Notes under the pieces: generated by a model
The model's input: only the letters and a program-made list of their open reading frames with translations
What the model was told of the DNA's origin: nothing
The model's database searches: none
In this document: piece by piece, positions 13,301-59,800 of the stretch
How positions within the stretch are numbered: position 1 is the stretch's first letter
Layout of the letters: each line of letters starts with the position of its first letter
NCBI GenBank assembly: GCA_030704615.1
Contig: CM060731.1
Coordinates: 38,130,001 to 38,194,000, forward strand
From: Takakia lepidozioides
Lineage: Eukaryota; Plantae; Bryophyta
Direction: 5' to 3'
DNA: 64,000 bases
Made by a program: the position numbers and the translations under genes

Positions 13301-13492
13301 CAGCAGCCTTCTGCTGTAAACCTCTGAAGGACGGTGGCATGAGGTCATCATTAATCTCCATTTCTGAAAACACAGCCTGTGCCGAGCGGCACGAACACCC
13401 CGCATGTCCGGGAGCGCAGGAATCCGGGGAAGAGGCGCAGCAATGCTGCGGCATTGCTGCGCCATCATGGCCTGCCCTGCTCCGCTCGCCAT
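7320..13492 (-). CDS. Plastidic glucose/monosaccharide transporter (MFS sugar porter), 12 exons
   Basis: Approximate exons 13255-13492, 12789-12933, 12338-12538, 11695-11775, 10556-10669, 9686-9779, 9421-9577, 9075-9221, 8856-8929, 8380-8469, 7822-7937, 7320-7499. Motifs LPHVLTAAMANFLFGYHIG, DKIGRR, PLYISE, ESPRWL, QQFAGINGVLYFS, ETKGRSLEEI; transit-peptide-like exon 1; GT-AG junctions. Confidence 0.93.
10981..11620 (-). mobile_element. Intronic cluster of RTE/RTEX-like LINE 3' ends: one ~430-bp copy plus three 50-65-bp tails
   Basis: 10981-11412 aligns by eye with 51486-51910; tails tgtactcataagacgttgtttgccgtagccttgtgg recur at 11422, 11499 and 11572; followed by (GA)n. Confidence 0.85.
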
Positions 13493-13585
13493 AGCGCTAT
13501 GGAAACACGAGCCTGCATAGAGAGTAAGTTATAGACGATACACCGTTTTATCACTTCCATGTCGTCTCCACTACTCAAGTTTGTC

Positions 13586-13707
13586 CACGTGGAGTGACGT
13601 ATATGGCCGAACCCTCTTCAATACGACTTCGAACGTTCCGTACAGACCAGCTGAAACCATGACACGTGGGAGAAAAGCGTTCTTGCGCAGTATGCGGCAT
13701 CCACGTG
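13586..13707. promoter_or_regulatory. Cluster of three G-box/ABRE cores (CACGTG) plus TGACGT upstream of the sugar transporter
   Basis: CACGTG at 13586, 13663 and 13702; TGACGT at 13595; about 95-215 bp upstream of the ATG at 13492. Confidence 0.55.
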
Positions 13708-13864
13708 CTCTCCGAAATTATCCATTCATCCATGAGTTGCTCTGTTGAGCCTTGTTTGGAACGAGTGTGAAAAAGTTTTTGAAGTTTCACCGAAGTTTGA
13801 AGAAATTTTGTGATGAGGTGTGAAAAACAGTGTCTTTTCCAAGAAAGTTGAAGAATAGCTGATC

Positions 13865-14361
13865 ATGACCGGTCGTAAGACAATTTCAATTCCTTTCAAT
13901 TCATGTAAGTAATTCTACTTGCGTCAACTATTGGGATGCCGATGGCATCAAAACAGACAAACTAAAACGTTCATTTTGCTCTCCCAATTTTGCATGGCTT
14001 ATGTTGGATTGCAGGTCGATGTGGAGAATTTGTTCGAAGAAGCAAGAAAAAAACAAGTCTTGGAGATTGTTCCCCGGTTGCAGGTGTCCACTTTCCAAAC
14101 GGAAGGCAAGGGACACCATTAGTTAAAAATGTCTGGGCAAGAGTCTTCCTCTCTCTTTTTAGTTCAAGACATTCGACATTTGCATTGTAATTTGCAGCTC
14201 TGGAGCATACTCGAAAAAAAATTGAAATAGCAGTAAACAAGATGAAAGTTGCAAAACTTGACAAGGAGGAAAGAAGGCTAATGAAGAAGCAAAACCTTAG
14301 GGAACACGTCCCGGACTCTGAGGCCGCACAGGGCTTCGGTTCCATGGAGGGCCACGCATAA
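13865..14361 (+). CDS. Candidate 3-exon gene encoding a 90-aa basic small protein of unknown function
   Basis: Exons 13865-13904, 14015-14083, 14198-14361 with donors GTAAGT and GTGTCC and TTGCAG acceptors; 40+69+164 = 273 nt, open ATG to TAA. Confidence 0.5.
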
Positions 14362-14951
14362 TGATGCGAGATCAAAATATGTAGATTGAACTGTCGTGCG
14401 GCGAGACGCCGAGACGCCGAGACCCTTTTCTTTGTGACAATTATCTCATATTCAAAATAAATATTCTATATGAGTACCTGCAAGGTTGTCAAATAGTAGC
14501 TGCACACCGCACTATAAGTCATCCTTGTACAAAACAACAACCATGAAGTGGTAAAATATGGAAGCAGCTGCAAAATCAAGTGGAGGAGGACAGAAAAGCA
14601 CAGTAGCTTTGCTATTTCAAATGTGTTTAACTTAGTTCCGCCTTCTCTCTCAATCTTTTGTTGAAATTACAGAGCCTGTTCATGGAGAAGTAAGAACTAA
14701 GAACCAAACAAGAGAAGATAAACCCAAGCATAGCAAGATCCATATGATCTATCTTCAGTAGATGAGGTAGACGCAAGTGTCAGTATTGAAAGGAAAGTGT
14801 TCGAGAAGATGTATCGAGCCAAGGGCACTGCCTCCTACTATTTATTTCCTTGTTTTGGCAGCTCATTTTATTCATAAGGAAAAACCAACATGTAACCCGA
14901 CATGATATATATATTGTGTAGAAGGTTTGCTCAGCTCAGAACGGTGGCAGT

Positions 14952-31726: not shown

Positions 31727-31767
<41 letters not shown>

Positions 31768-31776
31768 AGAGAGAGA
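31727..31776. repeat. (GA)n microsatellite abutting the 3' end of the Penelope-like element
   Basis: Direct reading of the sequence. Confidence 0.95.
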
Positions 31777-32457
31777 GGCAGCCTAAGGTAGATTGCCCGC
31801 CAAGGGAATAGGTCACCATATTGAGGGAATTGAAGCACCGCCGCCGTTACGCCTCCCAAAGGGAGATGAGAAAGGACTGGAATCTTGCCAGAGTACTTGT
31901 AAACAGCATTGAAGCGTTTCCATAGCCATCAAAATCATAAAATTCGTGCTAAGAGATCCCTCTGACACCATCACTTCATCTCCCGTAGAAAAAACGCACA
32001 GTATCGTGCAAGTTTTATGGCAGGAGTGGAAATATGGCAAACCATTGCGATTTCATCCATGTGGGATGAAAAATAAGGAATGAAAGGTGAATATTCCCCT
32101 GTTGTCATCGCCATGTCATCCAGCAGGGATGACATCCTAAAATCGATGACCAGAACCTGGCATTCATTAGGGTTAGATATAAATGACCTTAATAATCCAA
32201 AGGAACCAGGTAAAAAATGATAACCATAATTAACATTTAATGGAATTCATCCATTATTAACTATATCCGGTATGGATGAAGATAGCAGAAAGTTAATTAT
32301 AGTTTAGTCAAAAATTACCTTAGTACCAAACCCTCTGGGTTATGGAATAGGTTACCAACATGATCCATGTACAGAGGGAGAGAGAAAGGGAGAGAGAGGG
32401 ATCCCACCAGCCAGCCCCTGGTATGGCATTCCCTTATGGGATGAGTGTGGTATACAC

Positions 32458-34974
32458 TCACCCCGTAAGGGAGTGCATACTAGACCCATTCTCATAAAAA
32501 CTCTCCCTTCTCTTTGTAGTCTTCATCGCTGATTTTTCTATTTTAGAAAAACCAGATGGATATGAAGGTCTACACTCACATCTCCCATGGTCAAAAAAAG
32601 AATAGTACAAAGGAAAAAGGTATACAATCATGTAAGAATGAGTGCAGAGTGTACCTTTTAATCTTTCAATGAGCTCTTGTAAAGGGAAGAAAAGACCAGG
32701 GAAGGAGCCCTGTTCAAGGAAACTTATCAAAATCCGGGTTAGTTTTTTGGTTTTGAAACCATTCCTCCCAAGGGTATGTATGAGAATATAGCATTCATTC
32801 CAAGCAAGATTAACACTGCTGGAAATATACAAAATCGGAAAGGCTTGTGAAATCACTACATTGTAGGATTGATTCACAGGTCTATTGGATAAGAACTGGA
32901 TATACTGAGTATAGGAGAAAGGCAAGAGTCTTCTCTTATCATATTTCTGAAATTGAAACTCACCTGAGTTTGGGTTTAGCACAGAGATCTGAACGTTCAT
33001 AAAACAGGCTTCCAAACCTGTTCTCAACAATTCAGGTTTGATTTCCACAACATTCAATGGGTAAATCCACCATGGATTACTGCTGCTCCTGTCTGCGTCA
33101 GGATTAAGGAATAACATAGCATTGCCAATATTAAGCCAACAGATGTCATCTATATATCTGAAAGCATATTGAAACTTAGGCATCAATTGATATTGTCCAA
33201 GAGCTGTCAGTCTCAAGATAAATTTAAGCTCATAGGAAAGGAAATATATGTTGCACCATAATGGTGAACACGAAAATCCCATAGGAATACCTGACACTTG
33301 ATGCCAAACACGGTCACCCAATGCTACGAAGCAGTGGGACATCAACCACTTGTGGAGCTGAAGCAACTTGGCTTCAGGAAGCTCTATCCAAGTACCATTC
33401 TTTGGGGAAGAAAGACTCCACTTGCACTTCCCGAAGATCCCGTTTTTTGTTTGGATCCAAATGGTGTGATGTGACCTTGGGTGGTTTACATGATATTGCT
33501 GGAAAGCAATTTTGATCACGTATTCAATAGCATCACCCAGATTATCGTCACCTGCCAAAGGGATGTTTTCATAGCACTGGGTAATGTCAGCCACAAACAC
33601 ATCATAGATTTTTGCAGGGAGGTTTAAAGTGAAATCAGTGATGCTATCTATAATCCAATACATGGCAGTAGACACTTTGAAAAATTGTTTGTAGGTGTCT
33701 AAACATGCTTTGGCCCATTCCTTGACCAAGGGTAATAGGAACATAGTGGCACGTGTAAGAAGACAAGCAATTTCACTGAACACACAATTATGTGCATTGG
33801 TAATCCAACGGTACTTTTTTTTGTGTAGCTTGTATATTCCCATCATGTAGGGAAGACTACAAAAAGCCACCTCAACTTCAGGGATCAGATTCTGTACCTC
33901 AGTAAACAGGCTTTCCAAGACTGAATCAGGTGATGACCATACCTCATTTTAGGTGCATGGTTTGAAATCCTTACCCATAAGCCGGTGATAAGCTTGGGTT
34001 CGGATGTGCTTCACACAAAGAAAACATACGTTGTTGTTAGCCTCATCAAGACCAGACATGTACAAGTGTTTAAGAAGCCAATCCAGTTCCTCCGGAGCTT
34101 CTTTTTTGACAAGTGGGTTACCCTCATGATGAGAGTAATTGCACCGTGTCAAACTGGCTTTTTTCTTCAGCCTGTCCCAACATGTAACCTTCAACCATTG
34201 ACAGCATTCTACTATCCAGGGTTCTGAAATGTTCACATGAAGAATGTCACATGTTTTAGAGAAGGCAAGAGCTATCTCTATAACAACATCCTTTATTAAG
34301 GTTTTTTTCAGTGGAATGTGGTTCATACCTAGGCTGAAGAGTTTTCTCAGCTTGGGATGTCTTATAATGTTCAGATCCATAGTTCTGACATGTTGTATGG
34401 GGGCAGAATCAGTTATTTGAATCTCAGCCAAAGTATCCACATCACAAAAAGCCTTGAACCTCTTGGCTGTATTGCAGAGGCAAGGGGGAGATTCAATCAG
34501 ATCAGGTAGGAAGTTAAAGTCACGAAAAATAGATGCAGGCAGATAGTACTTTGTACTACTCTGTTTATGGTATGTCCATCCAAACATCACTTCCTCAGTT
34601 AACATAGCCAGGTCATTCTGTCCGAAATTCAAGAATGCTTCTTTTATCATACCCTTAGGACTTATCCATTCCATAGCCCGGTTAGGGTACACCGTGTGTA
34701 CAAAACCAATTGGGGCTGGCTTTGATGCATGGGTGATGAAGTTCCGGCCATGGGCATGTATCTCAATTCTTCTGATTCCATCTTCTTGAAAAAACATTTC
34801 ATCTGCACAACCAAAGTAGAGTTGCATACCATGAGAGAGGCGGTTACAGGTCCATCCACGAGTTGAAGTCTCTCTTGTGGATTGGGGAGAACTCCCCGTT
34901 GCCTTGCCTATTTCGAAAAGGCTCTTGGCTGGCGATATTGATAGCAGTGCTGGAACTGGAACCTGAACCTCCAA
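32458..34974 (-). pseudogene. ORF2: Penelope-like reverse transcriptase, one in-frame TAA at 33949-33951
   Basis: ORFs 33949-34974 and 32458-33918 are in the same frame. Motifs CLC...HVRTMDLNII...LRKL...G.NH, DEANNNVCFLC, YKLHK, ADITQCYENIP, GIPMGFSCSPLWCNIY, FRYIDD, IYP, YDKR, SNRP. Confidence 0.88.
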
Positions 34975-36460
34975 AAGGAGTTCTGGTCATCGTCTTCGAG
35001 CTGTCAGAGTTGTTGTTAGAATGTTGCCCACAGCCAGAGCGCCCACCTCTTTGGTACGAGCCTCTGCCTCTTACAGGTGTGCTTCTGCCTCTGTTGTTAC
35101 CAGTCTTGCCTTGCTGTGGAGGAGTTTGTCCATCCGGGCGCTGCCTTTTGTAGCCACTGAATTGTGGTTTTGGAAGGCTGTCAGAAAAAGCTCCAGGCTT
35201 AATCATCTTCTCAACATATCTGGCACATTTTGCTTCACCCATTTTGCTAAGTAATTTAGCATTAGGTTCTGCAGCAAATTCGCATGCGGCCTCCATGATA
35301 ATCTCCCGTGTCATTTGAAAGGTTATCTGTGCCAAGACCGTTGACCTGGCAGCTTTCATCATCCATACCAAGAAGTTGTAATACTTTGCCTGTATAGATG
35401 GGTAAGCATCATTGGGGAAGAACACCGTCAGATTGTTGAGCATGAACCACACAAGGTGGTCAAACCAAGCAACACTTCCCATGCAAGGTGACGGCGCACC
35501 TCCAGATCCACAATTACATCTGATGTATGGCCTATGCCAGTTAAACAACTGACTCTTGTGGTTCCGAGACCTTGTCGAACCAACAGGCATGTCATTCTTT
35601 GTCCTTAGAGTCATGTCATCCCCTTTCTCACAGAGCTTGTAGTAGAAGGTTTTCAATGGCCAAGAAACAGCAATAGGTTTTTTTTTTAACCTTTGGATCC
35701 CTTCTTTTGCATCTGCTGCACACGCGTTCAGCAGGTGTAAGGTTGGTCCATTTGACCCACATGTCAATTGATATGGGTGCAATCAGATTGATATTGGCCT
35801 GGGGTGCCACATCATGCGGTCGTTGTTAGCAATCTCAAGCTCCACGGCTCTAGGGGGCATCCAAGGGACAAACTGCAGGTTACCTGGAGTTGCTCCCGCA
35901 GCCCTTTCTTGCTCCACTTGGGAAAGTTCCACTTGTTCATAGAAGTCCCTCACTGCATCCAATTCCCCTTCAGGTACCACCATGTTCCCGAGTATGGGAT
36001 GGTTAGTGACGGACGGAATGAAGTCTTTTTCCATTGTGTTGGAGGACTTCTGTGTGGGGGAGCTGACTGCTCATCATCAGGGTTAGCAATTCTGAGTGCT
36101 TCCTCAATTGCAGCTCCTTTCTTCTCCCAAAACGTCACTTCACTAACATCTTGCTCCAATATCTTAACCAATTCATCGCTGTATTCCTTGAGTCTTACAA
36201 GGTAACTGCCTTTTCTGTTTGCACATATTCCAAGGGCTACCCAATCCTCCAGGGCTAGTGTCTCAAGCAATAGGACAAGATTTTCATCACCTGAATCATT
36301 AATAGCTGCAGAGTCCAACATTTGCAATGTAGAATGAAAATCACGTGGAGTGATTTGTGTGAGGGTAGCTTGTACAGCAGGAATCGGAGGGGGAAGAGGG
36401 GATTGGTACCCCAATTCCTTGAGGTCATCACTCCATTCACGAACATGCTTGGTCACCTTC
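34844..36460 (-). pseudogene. ORF1 of the Penelope-like element, unknown protein with Cys clusters and an RG/RGG-rich tail; disrupted
   Basis: Contiguous fragments 35950-36456, 35783-36034, 35628-35810 and 34844-35782; CSRC, CNC...C; tail NRGRSTPVRGRGSYQRGGRSG; overlaps the start of the RT frame. Confidence 0.65.
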
Positions 36461-39400
36461 TGCCATAAAATGAAGTCAGTGCATCATAAACAGATCTGGA
36501 AAGTGAAGGGAGTAAGACTGATAACGTGTACAGACACCACTAAGTACATTGGTCAAGGGAAAGAGAGGGAAGATACTATGTCTTGTCGGGACATGGACAG
36601 GACCAAACATGGTCATTGTCAATTTTTACGACAAATCAACCTCATGAAGAGGCATTATCAGTCAAACTCCACTTCAAATCAGATCTTATGATGACCTCCA
36701 TTACATTTCAAAGACAAAGAATCTACCTGGTAGATTTCAATGACAAGAAAATACGGGTGGGAGGGTGGGATTACTTAGAAGATCCCCTCCTTATAATAAT
36801 CCAGCTTTATATTCTAAGGAACAGTATGCTAAACAAGTGTTCAGCCTGTTTTTATGCCTGTTTTAGAATTATAAGCTATGGGTGGCATCTAAGCAAACAA
36901 TTAAATGTTTGCCTATATCATGCAATAGTATTGCTCATCTGGAACCCAAAAGTTCCAGCTATTTTCCATTAATCACACAACCGGGATATTAAATCATCTG
37001 GTTACTTGATAAGATAACCAATTTTTTAATAACAAAAACCCAGAGCTTATCTGCTACATTTTTAGAACTTCTTGTATCATGACACAGAGTCAAAACTCAT
37101 TGCATTGTTTAGTAAGCTTGATTTCCCAGAACTGCTTTCTACTGCAGTGCTCTGTATCAGAATATGCCATAGCTAGCAAAAAACACACAGCTATCTTTTT
37201 TGTAACATAAAATCCAAAGCCATGTTGTAGGTTAATCAGTCTTTGATTACCAAGCAACAACAGGGGCTTCTCTTTAAAACAACCAGACCTGGTTTAGGTT
37301 TGGGGTCATTATGTTACAACCTTGACAAGGTGTTTGCACAAACAAAACTGTATACAATCTGTAATTACAGAGTGACATGAAGAGGTAGCAGGTTACTTAC
37401 CTTAGCAGATTGTATGCAAGGTAAAAAAGAAAGGGGGTTCAGACATCCACAGAGGTTCCATATATTGAGCACATAAAGGCATACAGGGCTCAGTATAAAC
37501 CATATGCAAGCTCTGGCCTCTCCCCTACCGTGTTGCTTGAAAGTGTACATATCAGAGTAGCAAATCGTGCTCTAAGCATGAAAAAAGAGCATATATTTGG
37601 TCTGGAAACCCTACTTCCAGTACCATATTTCAATGCAGCGGAAATCATAACCCAGAGTCCTTAATAGAATTCCTGTGTTCTAAAAAGGCTCGCTAATGCA
37701 CTTGCTGCTTCAACACATAGATAAAGGTTGTAAGCATATCCAGATTGATCATGTAGTGAGGCAAAAATGAGACATCTCCCTGGATAATCAGCTGATGTCG
37801 ATGTCACTTCACTTGCAGGTTTGTCATCAGATTCAAGCTTCAAAAATCACATTAAGTGAGGACCCTCACCTGGTCCCATCACAAGCCCCCACAAGAACCA
37901 AGAGGTTATTGAGAATTGTGGAACCCCAGGTGAATCGGGTCTCACGCTTGTTATCGCTGTACAACAAGAGTTCTAAAGCAAGAATCAGTTCTAAACACAA
38001 GCAAGGTTATCCACAACCTTAATCGATTGCGGAAGAGGACTCGACATCGCTCCAAGCACTTGACAATCAACAGCACAAACAAGCAATGGTTTGCTTGAAA
38101 TCTATGCGCATTTTAACAGGTGAAGAAACCCCCTGAGTTTTTATGAGCAGTGCTGAAACTTAATGATCCAGAGAGGATCTACAAGCAGTCGGGCAGCCTA
38201 AGGTAGATTGCCCGCCAAGGGAATAGGTCACCATACTGAGGGAATTGAAGCACCGCCGCCGTTACGCCTCCCAAGGGAGATGAGAAAGGACTGGAATCTT
38301 GTCAGAGTACTTGTAAACAGCATTGAAGCGTCTCCATAGCCATCAAAATCATAAAATTCGTGCTAAGAGATCCCTCTGACACCATCACTTTATCTCCCGT
38401 AGAAAAAACGCACAGTATCGTGCAAGTTTTATGGCAGGAGAGGAAATATGGCAAACCATTGCGATTTCATCCATGTGGGATGAAAAATAAGGAATGAAAG
38501 GTGAATATTTCCCTGTTGTCATCGCCATGTCATCCAAGCAGGGATGACATCCAAGCAGGGATGACATCCTAAAATCGATGACCAGAACCTGGCATTCATT
38601 AGGGTTAGATATAAATGACCTTAATAATCCAAAGGAACCAGGTAAAAAATGATAATCATAATTAACATTTAATGGAATTCATCCATTATTAACTATATCC
38701 GGTATTGATGAAGATAGCAGAAAGTTAATTATAGTTTAGTCAAAAATTACCTTAGTACCAAACCCTCTGGGTTATGGAATAGGTTACCAACATGATCCAT
38801 GTACAGAGGGAGAGAAAGAGGGAGAGAGAGGGAGAGAGAGAGAACTCCGACCCAAGCCGGCATAACTAAGAGCCACTTCGCCTCACGGCTACTGCCCCCT
38901 CTCGGGGGTGGGCCCTATTTTCACAAGAAACTTTTAAGGGGGAGGGGGAGGCGCACCACATCCCTTAGAATTTTCTTCCATGTGGTCAAATCGGACCAAA
39001 ACATGGCTTTTAAGCGGGGAGCTTTATTGAAGAAAACAGAGTATGAGGTTGGACCATAGATAGGGTTTTGGGTGGGGGTTGCTCATGGCCCTAGGAGATG
39101 AGGTGGTTACATGGGTGGGCTGATGCCAAGTCCGTTCCTCAAGCTTTGGTCAAACCCATTCTAACAATGACTTCATTGGAGGGTCTGAGGTACATGGAAA
39201 TAGACCCTAGGCCGGTAAGGCAAACCAACTTCTATAAGATGACACAACAAGAAGCGTATCAGGGTAGAGGTCACTATATTCCGACTTTAATTAATTCATT
39301 TTAAGAGATGATGAATATTTTAAATTTTTTCCCTGGGAGTAGATGAAAGAGGGGAATAATTTTCATTTAAAAAAATGAACTTTGGAAAAAAAAATGTGGT

Positions 39401-48054: not shown

Positions 48055-49356
48055 TTTGCATAAAGAGTGGCACATAGCAATCGGCAGTTTATGCTGTTGA
48101 TGTCTTACAGACTCAGCATCAGATGTCATTGTGGACGATGCACCCTCTTAGGTAATGATTGGCTGTATATATGTACCCTCATGTACTTCCATTGCCATCT
48201 AAGTGGGAGTTGTGATGACAAGGCGTGGTGCATAATCGGCTCTCTTGAGATCAAAATGACGACGTGCTTGAATTGTCACTCAATGGTGTAGTGTGACATC
48301 ATGCTCCGGTGCTCTTGTCAAGTGCTTGATTGTAGTAGGTATATTGTGTTAATGAGAACTAATTTAGCCACTAGCACATTGATATGTGTCATCATGCTGC
48401 TGTGCTGTAGGCTGTTTTGATATGTACTCATAAGACGTTGTTTGCCTGGGCCCAGTTTGGGCAGAATCATAGAACCAGTGCTTATCATAGACAGAGGATA
48501 TCAAGAATCTCTTGCAGGCAATATGGAAAAGCAATTTGATCAACATCTGGATCCATTCACAGGATCGCAGGTCCAGTGTGCACCTTTCAGAGTCTGTAGA
48601 ATAACTAGATAAGTTGCATGACAAGCCTTGATAGAGAGAAGCTGAAGAAACCTCACATAAATGACAATCTCAGAACACCACAAATGTTCCTTACATGGTT
48701 GTAGAAGCTCGTGCACCAACATCATTGAGCGAGCTTCATCACTGATCACTCATCAGAACAAAGAAACCAAAGATTCCCAAAATCTGGGGCAACCCCACAA
48801 TCATCTAAAGAATCTGCAGTCCTAGTGAGTCTGCAAGACAATGATAATGTGTATCAGAGCAAAACGTTTTCTTTCAATCAAAGTGATGTGAATGAGATGT
48901 ACAAAAATTCTGTTCTGTCACTGAGATTCTCTGCCTCTAGACTGTCTGTTCCAAAGTTCTGTTAAGTGCGGCCTGTAAACCGTCTGAGGGTCGTTAGTAG
49001 TTACTCCTCTCCTCTTGCGCATCACTCAATCGCTCAGGTTTCGACATTTCATCTGCTGTATCGACAGAGGCTTCCAGCTCAAAATGATCGAATGCTAGCC
49101 TTCTGAAGGCTCCACCGTTTCCAAACCAATATGTTGTCCAGTTAATTGTTGCGAGGTATGCAGTTGCCGGATGGTTGTTGTCGTTGTCTTCCCCCTGCAT
49201 CATCATGTACTCCCCTGGCACAAGTATCTGGCCCAGAGGATGATTGAAATAGATAATGCAGAGCGCAATAGATGACTGCTCCAAAACACTAGCAGCTCAA
49301 TGGGAGGTGTAGCCATTAGGCACGAATCCCCAGAGAGTGAGACGGTAGATCGATAG

Positions 49357-52300
49357 AATCAAACTTTGGAAATGGACGGAGACAATTTTGAAGGCACTCT
49401 GACTGTCTTGGACGAGGTTGATCGGTGGGAAAAATTCCTCTGCAGCGCGACAGCCTCTGCCACTTGTAAAAAGCAAGCAGCAAAGGTCATGCACGAATTG
49501 AAGCCCATCAGGGATTCCTTTCAGGTGCGTTCAATCAATCCCACTGTTTTTTCGGTTCTATGATTCACTGTAAAAAAGTTGCACTTGCCACTCGTTGCCG
49601 AGGCTAGCTAGGGGATAGGGGCAGTTTGTCTTACAAAGAATGTAGACACAGACTCTGCCTCAGAGCCACATGGGCTAGCCTGAAGAACAAAAACAGCTGA
49701 ATGAGGAAAGAAAGAAAGAAAAGAAAAGAAAAGAAACTTTACAACATCCACGGAAAGCTCAAGGACAAAAGAAAGCAGAATACAAGAAAGAAAGAATCTG
49801 GGTCGCCCAGCAGTCTCTATCCCCACCCTAAGCCTTCCAAATGTCCGTAGAAGAGAGAGTTGCAAACAATTAAATGGGCTGCAAGATTCCATCGTCGCGG
49901 AGAGGGAGGTGTCTCGACAGAATTGCAGCTTTGTAGTAAGTGGCGTCGCTGATTGCCACGTCCGCTTAACTTTGAGTGCCTACAGCTCTTGCCTCATGAG
50001 CCTGTCCCTGTCTCACTTGCAAACGATTGTCAAGTATCCCAGGTTTTAGGCAGCAGAAATGCAATGGAGAGGTCTGATAGAGGTAGCGAAGGCACCGACT
50101 GTTAAGCACTTGAAAGGAGTGATCTCAACCTTTCATAATATTTTGGCCCAAATGTGGCCTGTAGCTGGGGTTTATACAAGCAGATTCGATGTACATGGTG
50201 TTGTGCACCCAGCCCCAAGAACTATTTGAAGAATAGATGATTATATAGATTCAAGAAACAGAACCACAGGGGCCCAGAATTCCCAGCCATAGAGAGTCGT
50301 GGGAGTAACAACTGAGTTGAAAAGCCACTTCATAGTTGGAGGGAAGATGGATTTGCTTGCATTTCCCTGCTCATCAAAGCTGATTCTGGCAGTATAGCCA
50401 GGCTTCCCAAGAGATATCTCTGGCTTTTGTTAATGAAGGGAGAGATCAAGTAAGGGTGAAGTTGTATTTAGTGTGTAGGGTGGAGGATCAATGTGATTGT
50501 AGGACAAAGCCACATACTGAAAAGAGCTCATAATCCTGGTGGAAAGTTTGTAATAGATGATAGCAGATTGTGTTATGATTTGTTTCTAAATCTCATAGCA
50601 AGTGTGTGCAGGACATAGATTCACTCAGCATAGAGGCCTTGGCGGAGCTGGTGGAATTGACCCGTGATGCTGCAGAAGGACTCTGGCAAGTCACTCTTTC
50701 TGACAAGGAGGAGCGAAGTGTCTTATGTCATGATCAGCCCTGCATGTCTCACTTCTTCACTCTTGTTGGCGAGTCCTTCCATGCTACTCTGTGCACAAGG
50801 TTTGAAGGATTGGACTTGTGGACTGATCCGTTTCAGAAGGTCTATCTTTCCCCCTGCTAAAGCTCTCTTTCAGCCTTCCTTGTATTGATGCTGCAGCAGT
50901 CATACATTGGTATTATTCATAATTAGACCTTGCTGCCCAACCCTGTGCCTATTTGGGCTGAGCAAAAATGGGTCGCAGGTTGGGAAAGGGGAAGACAGAG
51001 AAAGAAAGAAACGTTTATAACGTCTGTGGGAATCTCACAGAGCTTATGTGGCAAAAGAAAGCGGGATAAGACATGAAATGAAATGAAATTGTACTTTTAT
51101 AACGTCCCTGGAAAGGTCGAAGAGCTTACGAGACAACAGAAAGAAAGAAACCAGAAATAGAGAGGGCCCCTCCACAAGCAGCCCAGAAGATGTACTCCTA
51201 CGACGTTGTTTGCCATAGCCTTGTGACCATAGACCCCGCCCCCAGTTTGGGAAGCAGCCCAAATGAATGAAAGAGAAAGAAGAGAGGATGTACTCATAAC
51301 ATGTTGTTTGCCGTAGCCTCGTGGCCATAGTCCCGCTCCCAGTTTGGGTGGACAAGAGGGAACACATACTACCTTTGTGAGGGGCTCACTCCGGTACTGG
51401 GACTTACCTTGATATAAACAATTAGTTCGGGCTTTGCAGACATCCTGCCCAGCAAGGAGAAATGAAATGAAAGAGAGAGAGAGATTGTACTCATAAGACG
51501 TTGTTTGCCGTAGCCTTGTGGCCATTGACCCCGCGCCCAGTTTGAGCGGGAACAAAAGGGACAGAACCTACCTCTGTCAGGTGCTGACGTTGGTAGTAAG
51601 ACTTACCTCCATATAAAGAATTAATCCGGGTTTTCCACGGATCCCTTCACACAAGCATCAATCTGCTGTGTGTGATTTGCCCAAAAACTAGGCCTCAGGA
51701 GGGCCTGGGCTTTGGCTCAGCCTCGAGACTTTCAAAGTTGGTAAACAGGGGTACAGGCACAATTCCGTTAATAGATTTGAAGAGAGCGTCTCTTTGGTGA
51801 GAGAACCCTGGACAGTGTATCAGAAAATGAATACTGTCTTCAGATTGCCCACACAACGGGCAATTGCACTCTCCCTTTCCTCTCTGCTTCTGTTTGCTGT
51901 TCAAAGGTAGGCTTCCTGCCCTGAGTTTAAATTTCAGTCTAGTGCCGAGAGTGGGTAGACCTTGAGGTCATCCAAGATGTCCTCCCCCATGTCACAGACT
52001 GGAAACAAGTTCAGGGAAGTTTTCTGCCTAACTTCATTTTCATCAGACAATCTCATGGCAACAGACATGGCTTCGGACACTACAGCCTCTAAGTCAGATT
52101 TATCCAGCAGGGTCAAGACTTGCGGATCCAGGTCCAGGTCCTTGAGGATCTCTTCTACTCTCTTCTGCCAGGACTTAGCCTGTTTGACAGGGCGGTCCTG
52201 TTTCCAAGATATAGAGTCGATTAATTTAGGATATCTGGTGTTGGGCATATGTTGCAGCTGACCCCACCATCTGACCTTGAATTCATCTCGTCGGGAGCTT

Positions 52301-53795
52301 AAGGACGGAATGCCAAACTCACCCCGAACAGCCACATTGGCTGTTTTGGAGCATGCTGACATACACTCCTTAAGCACCCCCACTTGAATGGATTCTAGAG
52401 ACTTAGCCTGGTTGGAGTTATCAACCCATATAGCAGATCCGTACTCCAAGGCAGGTCTAATAACGCGACAAAGCATGGTTTTCTTAACCTCAGAGTTGAC
52501 CCCTCTGCAGTGGAAAAATTTAGTGAGCCCAGAGCTTTGCCCTTGCCAGTTTGAACAACTTTCCGGATATGTGCATCCCAATTACAATTGGAGGAGAACT
52601 CAACGCCCAGGTAAGTGTAGGAAGGGAGGACGGGGATCTCTTGGCTACCCCACTGCCACTTAAGATCACTTCCTCCCTCTCCTCTGTCGTTGAATGCTAC
52701 CACTGCACATTTGCTGACATTAGCCTCTAGCCCCCAAAGATCAAAGTATCTCTTCGCGCAATCAATCAACTCCTGGAGATTGGTTGGAGTCTCCCCTATG
52801 CCTGCGAAGTCATCCGCAAACATAAGGGCTGGTATGGTGGTATCACCCACCCTTAACCCAAATCCCTCACTTTCCACATCCTCGAGGAGTTGATTGATGA
52901 AAACATTGAAGAGCAGAGGGGAGAGAGTACATCCTTGAGCTACACCTTGGTCTATGTCAAAGAAGTTGGACTTCTGTCCGTTAACAGTGACACAGCTTTT
53001 GGTGTGAGCATACAAGTTGTGGACAACTCTCCACATCTTTCCCTTGATCCCACAAGACCAGAGGCGGAACCATAGGCCATCTCTCCACACTGTGTCATAA
53101 GCCTTTTTGACATCCAGGAAAAAGACATAAGTGGGTTTTCCCTTCTTTTTTCCTTCCCTGGATAATCTGGCTTAGAGTGAAGATATGATCCACACAGCCC
53201 CTATTTCGCCGAAAGCCAGCTTGGCCTTCGTGGAAACAACCTCTAGACTCCAGATCAACCTCGAGACGAGTACTTATAACTCTGCAGAATGTCTTGCCAA
53301 CAGCATTGAGGAGCGTGATGCCACGGTAGTTCCCCGGTTCTTCTCTGTCACCCTTCTTGTATAGATTGACAATGACCCCCTGTCACCAGCGAAAGGGGAT
53401 CATTTCAGTCTTCCAGATAAGGTTAAAGCGGAGAACTAGGGCCTCTATCATGGGATCGCCACCGTGCTTGATAAGCTCGTTGACAATACCATCAGGTCCA
53501 CCAGCTTTATATCCATTTAAATGTTCAATTGCTTCCACAATCTCAGAAGAACTAATGGGAACATTATAAGCCATTGAAATATACTCCAGTTCATCAGGGC
53601 TGTTTTGAATCATAGGAACAGTTTTTCCAACTGTGTCCCTCCATTCAGCAGAAGACCCCTCACTGTTAGACCTAGAAGTTCTGCCAAGGATACTGTAGTG
53701 AGTTTCAAAGGTTTTGACAATGTCATCCGATGAAGTCACCACTGCACCTTTAGTAGTCTTCAGCGCTTGTACTTGCTGACCGTTTTTCGGTTAGT

Positions 53796-53836
<41 letters not shown>

Positions 53837-56800
53837 AATGTTCATAGGGATACTGAATTCTGTTCTTTGAAGAGTCTTCAGGTAGAGGTAGCGCTTACAC
53901 AAGGCTTAAGGCTGCTTGAGAAGTGGGAGCATGCTACGCTGCAGTTGACACAGTTGACCTGGCCCATGTATGAGCTTCATACTTGGGTAGGGAAGCCCTT
54001 CAAGGATGACATGCTGTTGATGTTTCATACTCGACTTGATGACATCCTCAAAATACGAGAGGTTAGTACTGTGTTACACTAGCATCTAGGAGTAAACCGA
54101 AGTCGGGGTTGACTCTCTGTTCAGTCAGATATCATTATGCACACAATAGGTGAGAACTCATTCATGCAGACCTGTTCTTGCTGACTAGAGCTAGGTTTTG
54201 CATCAGAAGAGTACATGGTGACATCTGACATGCCCTCATCTTAGTTAGATTGCAGCGGCTTACGTAGCATGTCCTTCCTTCAGTGCTTGAGCCTTGTTGC
54301 TACAAAGGGTGGAAAATCAAAATGAACAATCTGTTACAAACAATGTTAGCGCAGGTACATGAAAGGCTGCTGATGCTGGTCTCTGCAAATGAGATGCGCT
54401 CACTGGCTGAGCGTGTGTTCCAACCTTTCTCTACTGTGAGACCTTTTGAATGCACGTCGACTGCTGAGAGTCTGTGGAAGGTTGCTTTCTCCCACCTGTT
54501 CACTCTAAGGGCTCATAGTCTTGTTTCAGTGGTAACAAGTGGTATTGACTGAAAAGACTTTCTCATAATCTTTATCTGCTTTCTCAACGAGGTATAGGTG
54601 AAACCCTAAAAGCAGATACATGTCCTGAAAGATGCATGCAAAGGGTTCGATAATTTTGGTTTGGCATCAGAGCAGCATTCTAGGACGCCCAATACTTACA
54701 GATAGATTCATGTTGTATGTCTGATGTAGGCTGCTTTGGTGGAGTATGAGGAAAAGATGCTTCCAATAGAGGGGAAGATAGCCTTAAAACTGCGGGAACT
54801 CTTTTGCTCTTCTCTCCTACCTTCCTTTGCAGCATCTGTCAGAGAAAATGCAAACAACTCTGTTTCAGCTATGGCTCGGCCTCATCAGGTGGCAAACTTC
54901 TTTTCTTCTGGTTATAATGCATTCCTTAGACCATCTGGTGTTTGCAAATTTCTCTTTAGCTTTCAGGAATGTCCCAATTGCACTGACTTTATATGCAAAG
55001 TTTCCCTCTGTTGGGGAACCTTGGTAAATGAAGGCTAGTAATAAGATAAAGAGGTCGGTGTATCCTTGCACAGCCACATCTTTTTAAATTTGTTGTGCTG
55101 ACAGCTGTGTGTAGGTGATGGGAGAACTGCGCAGGTTTAAAGAGCTCTTTGGAAAACCTCTTGTGGTGCAGTGTCTGGCAAGTGAAGGACACAGGCTCCT
55201 CTCACTAATTCAAAGGTGATTGGCAGAGAGTCACAACTTCTTGTTGTTGTTTGATGCCCTTTGTTGTTCTTTGTCTGTCTCCTGTAGAGGAAATCAAAGT
55301 CGCAAGCTCCTCAATCAGAAGCATTCCTACTTTGTGTTGTGTGAAGGAGGAACCATGGAATCATTGATATGCACCAGTGTCAGCATGCAGGCATGTTGAA
55401 GCTCTGAGGAGTACATTTGAAGAGAAGTGTGTTGTGTTCAGCACCCATAATAGAAAGAATGAATTTGATGTGGCCTTGCCCCACTGCCATGCGGGGATAG
55501 TTGTTGGAAGCATCTACTGGTTGCTCCAACATGAATATAAGGTATGTTATGCTGTTGGCTGCTCTAAAGTTGTCTTTTAACCATTGTAGTAGATGCTGAT
55601 CTACACCGTTCTTCAACAAAATCCAGGACCCTCCAGGACCCTGGCCGCACAAAGTCATCTTGAATCTGTGGAACTCCTTTAGCAGTACATAATAGCTGGA
55701 ATGCAGCATCGAACAGATGGCCCAGTAGTTAGGGCACAAGGCCTCCTTATAACCAGTTGTGGGTTCAAAGCCACATAAGTGTATGTTGGATGCCACCCAT
55801 TAGGAGACCAAAATTCAAATGGTTGGACGTGCGAGATAGGTTGCCCGATAGCCAAGTGGCCACATTTTCAGAATAAGACCCAGCTATAAAAGGGGGGTTG
55901 CTGGGTCAACCAGTCACCTAATGTGTGGGTACCTTGGGACTTTCGAGTTCTTGGGGGAGGTTTGGGCAACCATGCCTGGTTGTGGCTGTTAGATGGTGTC
56001 CACCTTGCAAACAGAAGGCAGTAGCACTTTGGGGTAAAGTGACACCATATATCCGCTTGCTTCAGCAGGAGTGAACACTTTTTATTTTGCTGGAATGCTG
56101 ATTGTGTCAATAGAACACACTTGAAGTTATCTTGCAATATGTGAATCAGGTAGAGGAGACAAGGTGTACAGTTCTTGCCTTGATGCCTATTCTTGAAGCA
56201 GCAACCTCTGAAGCTCCATCCGCACAATGGCTTAACAATGAACTGAGGTGCTACACTTGACTATTGCAGGCTACCAGAATACTCTGGTCACTTTAAGTGT
56301 ATGGCTCGTGGGGTACCTTGTTATTGCAATTGAACTCTAATAGTTGCACTCACATGAAGAGATATCACATGTACCTAACTGGTTCGCCAGCTTGTGCCTT
56401 TCAGTGAATTGTTGCAGGATATTTCTGGCTACAAGAGAAGCCAGTTCAAGGTACGTACTATCTACATAACTTACATGTGGTGTGTGTAACTTAATGCCCA
56501 ATAGAAGGCTACCTTCTGAGGGGAGGAGTATGATCAAATATCTTCACATACCCACATATTCTGAGAACATGCTTCAGACATTTTAAACTTGATGGTCGGG
56601 TCTAGAAACCCTTTCATACCCGTTTTCATATGTGTCTGATAGTAGCCAATTACTTCTTGCCAGTTATGGGAGATGGGGGTTCGAGCAAATTTGAAGACTG
56701 TGTCCTTGGAGACCTCAGACAGGCTTCTGAGACTTGATCCAACAGATGGACATGTTGAGGTGACCTTTTCTTACTTTCAAGGTGGTTTATTGTTATATGT

Positions 56801-59800
56801 AAGGAAAATGGATCACTGTTAAGAAAGTGGACAAGGAATGCATGGAGGTCAAAGAGCTGAGGGTTGGCATCGTTCTTGCAGGTCACTTTTGATGATGAGT
56901 TGATGGCCATTATTCGTGAGACTCGCCAGCTTGTTACATTGGGGTTCACCATCGACGTATGTTCACTCTATTTCAAACTTTTGCGTACCTTACGTGGACT
57001 GACGGTATTCAATGAAGTTGATCACAGTACAGAGTTTTAGATGTTGCAAATAGAGACCCAAGGATGAAGCAAAGAGGCCTGGTCTCTGTTTGATGGTTGC
57101 ATTACCCCATGTTTACAAATCCAGCACATGGATTTCTCTTTCCCAGCTGCATGGAGTCACTGTCCCTGAAACAGCCTATTCTCAGTTCGAACTTGGCTTA
57201 TCATCAAGGGTGATAGGCCTGTTAGACACATGTAAGGCAAGAAAGTTGCCAGGACATCCATGCCTTAATAATGAAGGGATTCTCTATCCAGTGACTACTT
57301 TGACAAGATTGTGGGTGCTTGTATTGGCAGCTGGAAATAGTTAATGCAGTGGAGACAGCGCAGAGATTTCAGAAGCAGGGCATGCTGTTGAAGCAGGTGG
57401 CCAACTTTTACAATGAAATTGCTACTCAAATGATCCCCTGCCAAAAAATTATCATGTTGCAAGATGCACTGCGCTTTGAGGCCATTTTAAAGAACCCTTG
57501 CGACTCTTTGGGAAAACCTATCCACTGGAACAATGTTTCAGCTGTGCAGGTACTGTTTAATATGACTTCTCTGAGGCATCAAGCTTTCCTTGTTGCTCAG
57601 TATGCCATTGATGGGGCAAATGACATATAGGTGGCAGTCCACTACTATGAGTCTTAGGAAGGATATAAAATAGAAATCTGTCCACTATGTGTAATGTCCA
57701 TTTTGCTATCGTATGAACTCATCTGTAAGACAACCTCGCCTTTGCATCGTTCTTCTCCATTATTTATACCAGTGTGCTTCTAGTATGTTCATCATGAAAA
57801 ATTTGTGTTCGTCATCTGTTGTACTTGGAAGATTACGGATGTGTACATTCCAAGTAGCACATACTCGTGTCATACATGTGCTTGCTTGACAGACTTTGAA
57901 ACTGTTGGTTGTATATGATGAAGAGCTACACAGAGCGACTCCAGGAGATAACCACTGAGCTGTCAAAGAAAAACAGAATGCTCCAGATACAGCATAGGTC
58001 TGTCGTGCTTGGGCCTTGCTGCACATGTTCTGGTTCAAACTGTGGTTGTGCTAATCTGTTTGTGTTGCTATTCAACCTTGTGCCCATTTGAGGTATGAGA
58101 CTTATGTAGAGCTCTATTCTTAAGAACGATGCAACTCAATTTTTGGCTCAGACATGAAGGGTTTCAATGGACCTTAGATCAGGGGCTGCCAAGTGGTCAA
58201 CCATGAACAAGGTCCCTTTTGTTGCGATCATTATTTTTCGACATTTGAAATGATGAGTAGGTAACAAAGGAACTTTATGATATCCACGACAAGCGAGGAG
58301 GGTCCATGGACAATGTACATCAAACCAAGATATACTTCAGGTGTCTCCCCGAGATGAAGGGCCACACAGCCAGGCACTTGGATCTTCAAAGCTGAAGGCC
58401 ACTGCCAAAGATTGGGAAGCTCTAAGATTGGCAAGAAGGTATTGTACGCGAAGGAATAAAGTACACTCACAATTTGGCACAATGTGAGAGCACTGCCGAG
58501 GAAGTGGGCAGATACTTCTTATCACTTCAAACAGAAACTCTAAACTTATTATTGCATATCAAACTAAAAACTCGCCATTTCAGGTTAGATTAGTGCCTCT
58601 TCAGGTGCCCATCTCTATACTCTCCAAGTACTAACACAGACAGAAACCTGGGTGCAGTAAGCTGGTGCAGATTGTTAAGCACTTACTGACCATGGGGCTG
58701 CAACATAATCAAGACCAGTGGAAGAGCTGTTTGAGGGCGATGGGAGTCATCTTTGATGAGGCTGAGAAGCAGGGCTTCTCTCAACTCAGTGAATGGCGTC
58801 TTCATTGGGATGCGCAGGTATCTTCTGCAAGATAAGCGGCACTTTTCAAAAACTAATTTGATGATTTGACATGCTGGTATTGTATACGGAGTGGGTCCAC
58901 AAACTCTTGCATTTGAGAGGGGGATCCTAATCCTGTCATCGGCAGTCTTTGAACAAGCGTACTGCATGGGTGCCAGCTCTATAAAGCTTTGGAGCATCAG
59001 TACCATCTGGGTCTCAAGCAGATGACAGATTTTCTTCCTGAGGTTAATCTTTTTTCCCCATCTATTATTTGGTCCTTGGAAGTCTGATTCTCTCTTTCTT
59101 TCTTGGCTCTGGTTTTGTTTCCTCTCTCTTGTTTTTCCATTTTGTCCCATAAGCTCTTTGAGCTTTCGGCGGACATTATAAAGTACCATTTCTTTTCACT
59201 TCCGTTCATTTCTTTCTTGCACCGGGCGCAACCAGGAAATTGAAATTGAAGAACGCTTCTTCTTTTATTGCCCTCTGTATTGTGAGATCCGTGGGAAATT
59301 CCACTGTCTATTCCCTGGAACTCAATCTCTCACTGAAGTCTTCCACTATGAGGACCAGAAATGCTTGCCAGCTTACCTGCACGAGGCCTTGACCTTAGAC
59401 AATCCCTTGAGCAGTAGTTGCTTTTGGGCTGTTTTTTGGCTCTGGTTTTGTTTCCTCTCTTGTTTTTTCCATTGTGTCCCATAAGCTCTTTGGACATTAT
59501 AAAGTACAATTTGATTTGATTCGATTTTGTAATTAATATGTATAGAAAAGGCAAAGCCACATCAAATTTGTATTCATCTAGATGCCCATTGGTCCCTTTG
59601 GGCCTCTCATGGAGTTCTTATGGAAGTAAATCTGTTTGTCTTTTTTCTGTCTCGAAGTTGAATCATAGTTTTTGGTTGGTGGCTACTTGATGGGGGCCCC
59701 ACTTTTCTTTTCTATTTTTTTCTATTTTCTTGTGTACCCTAAGATCTTTGAGCTTCCCATGGATGTTGTAAAGTTCCTTTCTTTTCCTTTCTTTTGATTC

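What the first reader, a model, noticed from the sequence alone, without database searches (positions are those of the whole stretch)
31777..38830. Apparently endonuclease-less Penelope-like retroelement with pseudo-LTRs and an extra ORF1, inserted in a (GA)n microsatellite
Seen: ~620-bp direct repeats; an RT with GIPMG..SP, FRYIDD, YDKR, and the upstream CxC..H and D(K/E)ANN motifs; a separate upstream ORF1; 3' end joined to (TC)n. Established: these motifs fit Penelope-like elements, especially Naiad/Chlamys, which normally carry an N-terminal GIY-YIG nuclease and often hammerhead ribozymes, while known EN-less PLEs (Athena, Coprina) are mainly telomere-associated. Inference: a two-ORF, nuclease-independent or trans-dependent PLE lineage primed at interstitial GA/TC repeats, possibly undescribed in land plants.
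Basis: partly seen in the sequence, partly recalled or inferred. Interest (0 to 1): 0.9.

Follow-up and report, generated by a model that had tools for sequence, protein, structure and literature searches.

The report
Nuclease-less moss retroelement guided by microsatellites
This is a slightly broken copy of a two-gene, telomerase-related jumping gene with no DNA-cutting enzyme; its group is already known from spike moss and stonewort, and its relatives suggest it finds its landing sites by pairing its own pyrimidine repeat with a matching microsatellite.

Summary
On the minus strand, 31777-38843 is a retroelement with 625-642-bp direct repeats (98-99% identical), two ORFs, and a (GA)25 tract touching its 3' end.

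It is not a new class. ORF2 groups with the endonuclease-less, CxC-bearing "PLE-X" Penelope-like elements of Selaginella and Chara (Craig et al. 2021, PMC8557442). ORF1 is homologous to their "N-terminal extension" with the CxCX1-8C motif.

No GIY-YIG or other nuclease was found by Pfam, PDB profile searches, or two AlphaFold models searched against three structure libraries.

The copy is defective: ORF1 has a 2-nt insertion and a TGA, and ORF2 has a TAA.

What is new:
- In 14 related elements from at least four sources, ORF2 is followed by a hairpin, a box (CCAGGGG..GG.GG.GGG) and a polypyrimidine tract.
- In all eight elements with readable ends, the tract type, (TC)n, (TTC)n or T-rich, matches the repeat at the element's 3' junction.
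- Two elements sit inside a relative's tract.

This fits annealing-guided, nuclease-independent integration, which is inferred and not shown.

The scan's first readers noted at least eight similar two-ORF elements elsewhere in this genome.

The parts
31727..31777 (.). (GA)25 microsatellite, which is (TC)n on the element's sense strand, abutting the 3' end. It has one CC interruption.
   Evidence: TRF; sequence
31777..32401 (-). 3' direct repeat (pseudo-LTR copy). By comparison with relatives it appears shortened.
   Evidence: comparison with relatives
32373..32401 (-). Main polypyrimidine (TC-rich) tract at the start of the repeat, 57 nt after the ORF2 stop.
   Evidence: the same position holds (TC)n, (TTC)n or a T-rich tract in 14 relatives
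32402..32421 (-). Conserved G-box CCAGGGGCTGGCTGGTGGGA directly 5' of the tract.
32421..32483 (-). Stable RNA hairpin overlapping the ORF2 stop (about 25 bp; 86-nt fold -41.8 kcal/mol, z -4.45).
   Evidence: an equivalent hairpin in 8 relatives, z -1.3 to -3.9
32458..34797 (-). ORF2, probable ATG at 34797. Order: pre-CxC domain, CxC, DEANN (DKA-type) region, RT with a 99-aa motif A-B spacer, thumb. Broken by TAA at 33949-33951.
34450..34797 (-). Pre-CxC domain (about 100 aa) plus the CxC motif (Cys codons at 34480-34482 and 34474-34476). It sits where Naiad/Chlamys carry GIY-YIG.
34844..36456 (-). ORF1 (about 560 aa when intact). Broken by a 2-nt insertion near 36056 and a TGA at 35783-35785. 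The start codon reads GTG here.
   Evidence: (table 4)
35483..35518 (-). ORF1 CxCX8C motif (RPYIRCNCGSGGAPSPC) inside its conserved core.
35018..35110 (-). Arg/Gly-rich (RGG-like) segment of ORF1.
36555..36573 (-). Short internal TC tract followed by a GGTG box, 98 nt before ORF1. It aligns with the pseudo-LTR end and main-body start of relatives.
36457..38191 (-). Non-coding leader between the 5' repeat and ORF1. Probably part of a longer canonical terminal repeat in other copies.
   Evidence: depth; unchecked notes
37870..38236 (-). Candidate GT..AG intron (367 nt) in the leader, seen as a joint in one contig of a run guessed to be RNA.
38192..38843 (-). 5' direct repeat. It starts with the same TC-rich tract (38805-38844) extended by about (TC)5 of target repeat.

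Best explanation
Window 31777-38843 (minus strand) is a young but defective copy of a two-ORF, endonuclease-less Penelope-like retroelement. It belongs to a bryophyte-rich branch of the 'PLE-X' group described by Craig et al. (2021) within the Chlamys clade.

Shown:
- ORF2 is pre-CxC domain, CxC, DKA-type region, then RT with an IFD-length insertion.
- ORF1 (about 560 aa) carries the PLE-X CxCX6-9C core and an RGG-like tail.
- No nuclease fold or family is detectable.
- ORF2 is followed by a conserved hairpin, a G-box and a polypyrimidine tract, which is where the terminal repeat begins.
- The element ends against (TC)25.
- In relatives the tract type, (TC)n, (TTC)n or T-rich, matches the repeat at the 3' junction.

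Inferred mechanism:
- A free 3'-OH on the purine strand of a matching microsatellite (a nick, break or replication end) anneals to the short pyrimidine run at the RNA 3' end and primes reverse transcription.
- At the RNA 5' end the RT jumps to a second RNA and copies its 3' UTR back to the main tract. The hairpin and G-box favour exit there.
- The purine-rich cDNA end then anneals to the pyrimidine strand of the target and closes the 5' junction.
- This gives pseudo-LTRs bounded by the repeat on both sides.
- ORF1 probably acts as a nucleic-acid-binding chaperone.
For: Identity:
- phmmer finds 458 relatives at E<=1e-10. They include Selaginella P0125 (E 3.7e-81, 41% identity) and Chara P0140/144/145.
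- P0125 lies in tandem beside a truncated 28S rRNA gene, which matches the published 28S-targeting PLE-X.
- CxC is invariant and GLDKA is near-invariant.
- The motif A-B spacing is 99 aa.
- The ORF1 core matches Selaginella P0269 (5e-11) and Chara P0145 (1e-12).
- ORF1 precedes ORF2 in L002-L008 and L033-L037.
- In a quick tree the window sits in a 99%-supported clade of 16.

No nuclease:
- Pfam on the window ORFs and 30 relatives.
- PDB profile searches.
- AF2 models with pLDDT 82 and 84. No GIY-YIG or other nuclease fold appears in any list. Best rows: VIA Z 5.6 (an unrelated methyltransferase) for the 282-aa model and Z 2.1 for the pre-CxC domain alone; no Foldseek hit below E 0.39; Atlas TM <=0.31.

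Mechanism:
- A tract follows ORF2 in L003-L007, both Ceratodon elements, L002 and L034-L037.
- The repeat type matches at the pseudo-LTR start, pseudo-LTR end and 3' flank in 8 of 8 elements with readable ends.
- Ceratodon element 2 is nested in element 1's (TC)n tract, and L036 is nested in an older relative's (TTC)n tract.
- L037 has a 230-nt, 5'-truncated upstream copy with a fixed 3' end, which is the classical PLE layout.
- Hairpins are stable, with a CCUGGU/ACCAGG to UUUGGU/ACCAAG compensatory change.
Against: - No biochemical or read-level evidence for priming exists. All junction logic comes from 9-14 static copies, several on short-read metagenome contigs where repeats may be collapsed.
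- In the window copy the 3' repeat ends 598 nt after the tract, not at the canonical short tract. That needs internal priming, a truncated template or a later deletion.
- My tree contains no canonical PLE or TERT references. Placement inside PLEs rests on homology to proteins that the paper places there, on motifs, and on weak TERT-TRBD structural rows (Z 4.0-4.7).
- The conserved pre-CxC domain has no known fold, so a novel nuclease cannot be excluded.
- PLE-X families are reported to carry hammerhead ribozymes. I found none, but my scans also found none in the Selaginella control.
Confidence: 0.62

Rival explanations
1. The element has its own unrecognised nuclease. Either the conserved 100-aa pre-CxC domain, which sits exactly where Naiad/Chlamys carry GIY-YIG, or the Cys-rich ORF1 core nicks polypurine/polypyrimidine repeats. 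Integration would then be ordinary target-primed reverse transcription with sequence-specific cutting.
For: The domain is conserved from mosses to Chara and Selaginella, with near-invariant G-R, Y, E and W residues. It folds confidently into a beta-beta-beta-alpha-alpha-alpha-beta unit. EN+ Chlamys and Naiads also prefer microsatellites (PMC8557442). Insertions are interstitial, with no telomere repeat in the window. The Chara ORF1 core gives a sub-threshold GRF zinc-ribbon hit (E 0.002).
Against: There is no sequence or structural similarity to GIY-YIG or any other nuclease in Pfam, PDB or the ESM Atlas. The candidate Arg is not conserved in distant members. A nuclease model alone does not explain why the element's own tract type co-varies with the flanking repeat.
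Confidence: 0.18
2. The flanking repeats are made by the element and are not pre-existing targets. The telomerase-related RT would reiteratively copy the short pyrimidine run of its RNA onto a broken DNA end, building (GA)n or (GAA)n arrays, and then copy the rest of the RNA.
For: The junction arrays can be very long and always match the family's own tract: 418 nt of (CTT)n in L034, 240 nt in L037 and (TC)25 here. PLE RTs are the closest relatives of TERT (PMC8557442). There are weak TRBD-like structural rows. Tract lengths differ between the two repeats of one element.
Against: GA microsatellites are common in this window without elements nearby. Ceratodon element 1 ends with only about (TC)6. 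Two insertions landed in tracts that clearly pre-existed inside older elements. No empty site was available for comparison.
Confidence: 0.1
3. The element depends on another element in trans. It would use nicks made in (GA)n/(TC)n by the endonuclease of another retroelement, for example the GA/TC-targeting LINEs that first readers noted in this genome.
For: No nuclease of its own was found. Unchecked scan notes s1-459633 and s1-460756 report (TC)n/(GA)n-targeting LINEs in the same genome.
Against: The same architecture occurs with (TTC)n and T-rich tracts in other organisms, so a matching partner would be needed each time. The LINE notes were not verified here.
Confidence: 0.07
4. It is not a Penelope-like element but another RT class with true LTRs.
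For: It has direct terminal repeats with defined ends. Pfam sees only a weak RVT_1 match (E 0.006).
Against: There is no RNase H, integrase, protease or tyrosine recombinase. It has the CxC and DKA motifs and is homologous to published PLE-X proteins. Upstream repeats are variable-length and multiplied in relatives. The nearest language-model clusters are rotifer and chlorophyte RTs carrying the Pfam family HTH_animal.
Confidence: 0.03

Closest known systems
PLE-X families of the Chlamys clade (PLE-X1_sTam and relatives in Selaginella and Chara; Craig et al. 2021, PMC8557442)
   Same: The RT carries the CxC motif and lacks GIY-YIG. The N-terminal CxCX1-8C module is shared. Direct sequence homology exists to the S. 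moellendorffii 28S-inserted proteins and to Chara proteins. The elements form tandem or pseudo-LTR arrangements.
   Different: Here the CxCX8C module is a separate 560-aa ORF1 with an RGG tail, not a spliced N-terminal extension. Targets are GA/TC (or TTC, T-rich) repeats and not 28S rDNA. No hammerhead was detected. The hairpin, G-box and tract module and the matching of repeat types were not described.
Chlamys and Naiad (N-terminal GIY-YIG Penelope-like elements)
   Same: They share the CxC linker, the DKA/DK motif, the long motif A-B spacer (IFD position), pseudo-LTRs, a microsatellite insertion bias and a usual lack of hammerheads.
   Different: They carry a functional-looking GIY-YIG domain before the CxC. 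Here that position holds an unrelated 100-aa domain. Most of them have a single ORF.
Athena and Coprina (endonuclease-less, telomere-associated PLEs; Terminons)
   Same: They have no nuclease. Their RNA 3' end carries a short run complementary to a repeated DNA end that can prime synthesis.
   Different: Those elements use telomeric repeats at chromosome ends next to a hammerhead. This lineage is interstitial (no telomere repeat in the window), uses polypurine/polypyrimidine microsatellites, and is of the CxC/IFD type.
Stringent-type LINEs with a 3' stem-loop and a microsatellite tail (for example eel UnaL2; recalled from my own knowledge, not checked here)
   Same: A 3' hairpin sits next to a simple repeat that is thought to guide RT recognition and priming.
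   Different: They are an unrelated RT clade, encode an AP endonuclease, and have no pseudo-LTRs.

Membership tests
Penelope-like elements (general) | Conserved DKG-type motif N-terminal to the RT core | tested here: met
   GLDEANNN in the window; GLDKAxNN is near-invariant in 38 relatives. Naiads have DKA according to PMC8557442.
Penelope-like elements (general) | The RT groups with PLEs and TERT in a phylogeny | tested here: inconclusive
   The tree holds only relatives from this search. The link rests on homology to Selaginella and Chara proteins that the paper places in Chlamys. Weak TERT TRBD rows at Z 4.0-4.7. No PDB sequence hit.
Penelope-like elements (general) | Pseudo-LTRs formed by a partial upstream tandem copy | tested here: met
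   Direct repeats here. Relatives have upstream copies that are multiplied (L034) or truncated to 230 nt (L037).
Penelope-like elements (general) | Hammerhead ribozyme in the pseudo-LTR (many clades) | tested here: inconclusive
   None at Rfam E<=10 in the window, and none in 21 related loci (gathering threshold for 19 loci; E<=5 for L031 and L033) or by a core-motif scan. The Selaginella control was also negative, so the tests may lack power.
Naiad/Chlamys N-terminal EN+ clade | CxC motif between the N-terminal domain and the RT | tested here: met
   CLC in the window; both Cys are invariant in 61 sequences.
Naiad/Chlamys N-terminal EN+ clade | Insertion in the fingers (long spacer between RT motifs A and B) | tested here: met
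   99 aa lie between VADIT and GIPMG. This tests length only; the structure was not modelled.
Naiad/Chlamys N-terminal EN+ clade | N-terminal GIY-YIG endonuclease | tested here: not met
   Pfam, PDB profile searches, and AF2 with VIA, Foldseek and Atlas were all negative.
PLE-X (EN-minus Chlamys subgroup) | CxC present, GIY-YIG absent, N-terminal module with CxCX1-8C | tested here: met
   ORF1 has CNCX8C. Its core aligns to Selaginella P0269 and P0134 and to Chara P0145.
PLE-X (EN-minus Chlamys subgroup) | Sequence kinship to the Selaginella 28S-targeting and Chara families | tested here: met
   P0125 at E 3.7e-81, located beside a truncated LSU rRNA gene.
Athena/Coprina telomeric EN-minus PLEs | Telomeric repeats at the 3' end and a chromosome-end location | tested here: not met
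   No (CCCTAAA)2 in 64 kb with up to 1 mismatch. The 3' end abuts (TC)25.

The most novel reading that the evidence does not exclude
This lineage carries a heritable microsatellite 'address'. A hairpin, a G-box and a family-specific pyrimidine repeat let a nuclease-less, telomerase-related RT both start and finish integration by base-pairing with matching genomic microsatellites. The RT may also extend those repeats in a telomerase-like way, so the elements would seed or lengthen (GA)n and (GAA)n arrays at broken DNA. That would answer the question Craig et al. left open: how PLE-X elements integrate inside chromosomes without an endonuclease.
Probability: 0.15. Interest if true: 0.85.

Novelty: new variant of a known kind. 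Interest (0 to 1): 0.6.

Why it matters
Craig et al. (2021) wrote that it 'remains to be seen' how endonuclease-less PLE-X elements achieve genome-wide or rDNA-specific insertion. The comparison made here gives a concrete, testable answer. There is a conserved RNA module next to a family-specific pyrimidine repeat, and that repeat matches the repeat at both ends of the pseudo-LTR. It also shows that the group is widespread and diverse in bryophyte-type genomes and has a regular two-ORF plan. It further suggests a link between retroelements and the growth or targeting of polypurine/polypyrimidine microsatellites. For annotation, these units are easily mistaken for LTR elements or unknown repeats.

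Tried and rejected
- **Nuclease search.** Pfam on all window ORFs of 60 aa or more in the element and on 30 relatives; PDB profile searches; two AF2 models searched with Foldseek-PDB, VIA-wide and the ESM Atlas. All were negative.
- **Hammerhead search.** Rfam at gathering and E-value thresholds plus my own core-motif scan found nothing. The Selaginella control was also negative, so this is a weak negative.
- **ORF1-ORF2 frameshifting.** Rejected. The relative frames differ among relatives and stop codons separate the ORFs in L002.
- **An intron removing ORF1.** I considered a window donor CAG|GTGATG near 36292 and an acceptor near 34806, which are phase-compatible by eye. No read joint supports it and the donor position is not conserved in L002. 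One contig (L001/P0020) does fuse the first 55 ORF1 codons to ORF2. This is left open.
- **Alternative unit definition.** I considered an RNA ending at the main tract, with the repeat being the 5' UTR of a second unit. This is disfavoured: it needs internal priming in 8 of 8 elements, and L037 shows a 5'-truncated upstream copy with a fixed 3' end.
- **Searches that returned nothing useful.** The single-protein metagenome locus search found nothing. PDB sequence searches with the RT found nothing. The Atlas feature search for ORF1 gave no usable lead.
- **RNA evidence.** It is limited to contigs of runs only guessed to be RNA.
- **Unused resources.** The last large protein search and the complex prediction were not used, because no remaining question justified them.

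Full report
**Observation.** The region holds a retroelement on the minus strand.
- Direct repeats lie at 31777-32401 and 38192-38833. They match in three co-linear blocks at 98-99% identity. The 5' copy has one extra 17-bp tandem unit.
- (GA)25.5 at 31727-31777 touches the repeat end.
- The minus-strand ORFs, in order, are 36456..35950, 36034..35783, 35782..34844, 34974..33949 and 33918..32458.
- The last ORF carries SGIPMGFSCSP, FRYIDD and YDKRR. The one before it carries CLC and GLDEANNN.
- Pfam sees only a weak RVT_1 match (E 0.006).
- Only three other pure GA/TC tracts of 20 nt or more occur in the 64 kb, so exact contact with one is unlikely by chance.

**Gene structure.** Relatives of 650-790 aa align across both of the last two ORFs, so they are one ORF2 interrupted by a TAA at 33949-33951.
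- Many relatives start 10-25 codons before a conserved LGR motif. The matching ATG in the window is at 34797.
- The three upstream pieces align in order with an intact 556-aa ORF that precedes the RT gene in L002, at 31-40% identity and E down to 1e-35. ORF1 is therefore one conserved gene.
- In this copy ORF1 is broken by a frameshift and a TGA at 35783-35785.
- A DNA contig of the same organism lacks 2 nt at 36056, which is where the frames change (table 4).
- ORF1 precedes ORF2 in L002-L008 and L033-L037. Their relative frames vary and stop codons lie between them, so frameshifting is not the link.

**What family it is.**
- phmmer over 1.8 billion representatives gave 458 hits at E<=1e-10.
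- The named hits are Selaginella moellendorffii (P0125 cluster, 41% identity, E 3.7e-81) and Chara braunii (P0140, P0144, P0145), plus the moss Ceratodon purpureus (P0094).
- ORF1 also has a hit in the liverwort Calypogeia.
- In L031 the Selaginella element lies in tandem next to an LSU rRNA gene that stops at about model position 1170.
- That matches the 28S-targeting 'PLE-X' families of Craig et al. 2021 (PMC8557442, section 9). Those families have CxC, lack GIY-YIG, and have an N-terminal extension with CxCX1-8C. The paper also mentions moss BLAST hits.
- The ORF1 core (W-N-x2-RPY-x-R-C-x-C-x6-9-C ... W-x-D-H ... LNxLD) aligns to the N-terminal parts of Selaginella P0269 (5e-11), Selaginella P0134 (2e-6) and Chara P0145 (1e-12).
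- So the 'extra ORF1' is the known PLE-X extension, here a separate ORF with an Arg/Gly-rich tail.
- A quick maximum-likelihood tree puts the window in a 99%-supported clade of 16 moss-type RTs, next to P0126/127/129, then Selaginella and Chara. It has no canonical PLE outgroup.
- The motif A-B spacing is 99 aa, the length expected for an insertion in the fingers.
- Language-model neighbours are rotifer and chlorophyte RT clusters carrying the Pfam family HTH_animal (a lead only).
- Other agents' notes call this genome a moss. I did not check that independently.

**Is there a nuclease?** I found none.
- No GIY-YIG or other nuclease family appears in the window ORFs, in the small ORFs of both strands, or in 30 relatives.
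- The 100 aa before CxC occupy the position of GIY-YIG in Naiad/Chlamys. They are conserved out to Chara and Selaginella.
- Profiles of this region find nothing in PDB sequences.
- AF2 models (282 aa at pLDDT 82; 116 aa at pLDDT 84) give no Foldseek match below E 0.39. For the isolated domain the best VIA Z is 2.1 and the best Atlas TM is 0.31.
- The larger model gives only weak rows: a best VIA Z of 5.6 to an unrelated methyltransferase, and Z 4.0-4.7 to telomerase RNA-binding domains.
- The domain therefore has no recognisable fold. A novel nuclease cannot be excluded.

**The conserved 3' module.** In the window, ORF2 ends inside a stable hairpin (z -4.45). Then come CCAGGGGCTGGCTGGTGGGA and a 29-nt TC-rich tract, which is where the repeat begins.
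- The same order of hairpin, CCA(G/A)GGG..GG.GG.GGG box and polypyrimidine tract is seen in nine compared elements: the window, L002-L007 and both Ceratodon elements. The box and tract recur in L034-L037.
- The ORF2 proteins of these elements are only about 45-60% identical.
- In six of the nine elements compared, the base of the hairpin pairs CCUGGU with the ACCAGG of the box. L003 and L007 have UUUGGU with ACCAAG, a compensatory change.

**Matching repeats.** The tract is (TC)n in the window, Ceratodon and the JGI contigs. It is (TTC)n in L034, L036 and L037, and T-rich in L002 and L035.
- In all eight elements whose ends are readable, the repeated region ends in a short run of the same type, about 100-130 nt before ORF1.
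- In those eight, the 3' copy continues into the same repeat: (TC)25 here, (CTT) for 418 nt in L034 and 240 nt in L037, and T runs in L002 and L035.
- Ceratodon element 2 lies inside the (TC)n tract of a different element 1. L036 lies in the (TTC)n tract of an older relative.
- L034 has two upstream repeat copies, each starting at (TTC)n. L037 has only a 230-nt upstream copy with the usual end. That is the classical PLE layout of a 5'-truncated copy before a full unit.
- The window also has the short tract plus GGTG box at 36555-36573, 98 nt before ORF1. Its canonical repeat is therefore probably about 2.3 kb, and the 3' copy here is shortened to 625 nt.
- Higher DNA depth over 36.7-38.8 kb than over the ORFs fits this, but only loosely. 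So do unchecked notes of 1.4-2.2-kb repeats in other copies.

**Mechanism (inferred).**
- A purine-strand 3'-OH in a matching microsatellite pairs with the pyrimidine run at the RNA 3' end and primes cDNA synthesis.
- After reaching the RNA 5' end, the RT switches to another RNA and copies its 3' UTR as far as the main tract, before the G-box and hairpin.
- The purine-rich cDNA end then pairs either with another RNA's 3' run, giving tandem repeats, or with the target's pyrimidine strand, closing the 5' junction.
- In the window, about (TC)5 of target remains before the 5' tract.
- The early end of the window's 3' copy remains unexplained.

**Expression.**
- DNA contigs of the source organism cover the whole stretch at 95-99% identity, so the family is multi-copy.
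- One contig from a run guessed to be RNA joins 38237 to 37869 (read as 37868; shifted by one mismatched base to place the AG). It skips 367 nt with GT..AG ends on the sense strand. Two such runs share the same acceptor with a second donor at 38017.
- No DNA run shows these joints.
- This suggests transcription from the terminal repeat with a leader intron, as in Penelope and Chlamys-3 (PMC8557442, section 10). The run types are not certain.

**Verdict.** It is wrong on novelty of the lineage, because this is a bryophyte branch of the published PLE-X group, and this copy is dead. The added value is the conserved module and the family-specific matching of repeats, which point to annealing-guided integration.

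Noticed in passing
window 37830-37980: A stretch of about 150 bp inside the element's leader has DNA contig depth about 100 times that of the ORFs (37,000-64,000 against about 300). It also appears in contigs of the two runs guessed to be RNA. It is probably a separate very high-copy short repeat or a non-autonomous derivative.
   Followed up: partly
L001 1866-4172 (JGI contig Ga0175859_1152522): A related copy fuses the first 55 or so codons of ORF1 in frame to ORF2 and lacks the rest of ORF1. It is either an internal deletion or a retrotransposed spliced RNA.
   Followed up: partly
L033 1-14400 (Ceratodon purpureus CM026427.1): Two different members of the family are nested. Element 2 (repeats at 5850-7169 and 11485-12804) sits in the (TC)n tract that follows ORF2 of element 1 (repeats at 1-1308 and 13075-14381).
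   Followed up: yes
L034 12332-12749 and L037 11167-11406: Very long (CTT)n arrays (418 and 240 nt) lie at the 3' junction of the (TTC)-type family members. They are longer than ordinary microsatellites, which raises the question of whether the RT adds them.
   Followed up: no
L031 9331-12936 (Selaginella moellendorffii GL377659.1): The PLE-X tandem abuts an rDNA unit whose LSU gene is cut at about model position 1170. Rfam finds no hammerhead in this element even at E<=5, although the paper reports ribozymes for these families.
   Followed up: partly
window 11626-11651 and 53796-53832: Two further pure (GA)n microsatellites have no element attached, so such tracts are common in this genome.
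   Followed up: no
window 49030-63800: Another first-reader note places an IFT dynein-2 heavy-chain gene here, which fits an organism with flagellate sperm. Only ORF coordinates were listed here.
   Followed up: no
L002 2595-3734: A PIF/Harbinger-type transposase (Plant_tran, DDE_Tnp_4) lies just upstream of the related element. This supports a plant-like host for the ENA ERZ25073694 long contigs.
   Followed up: no
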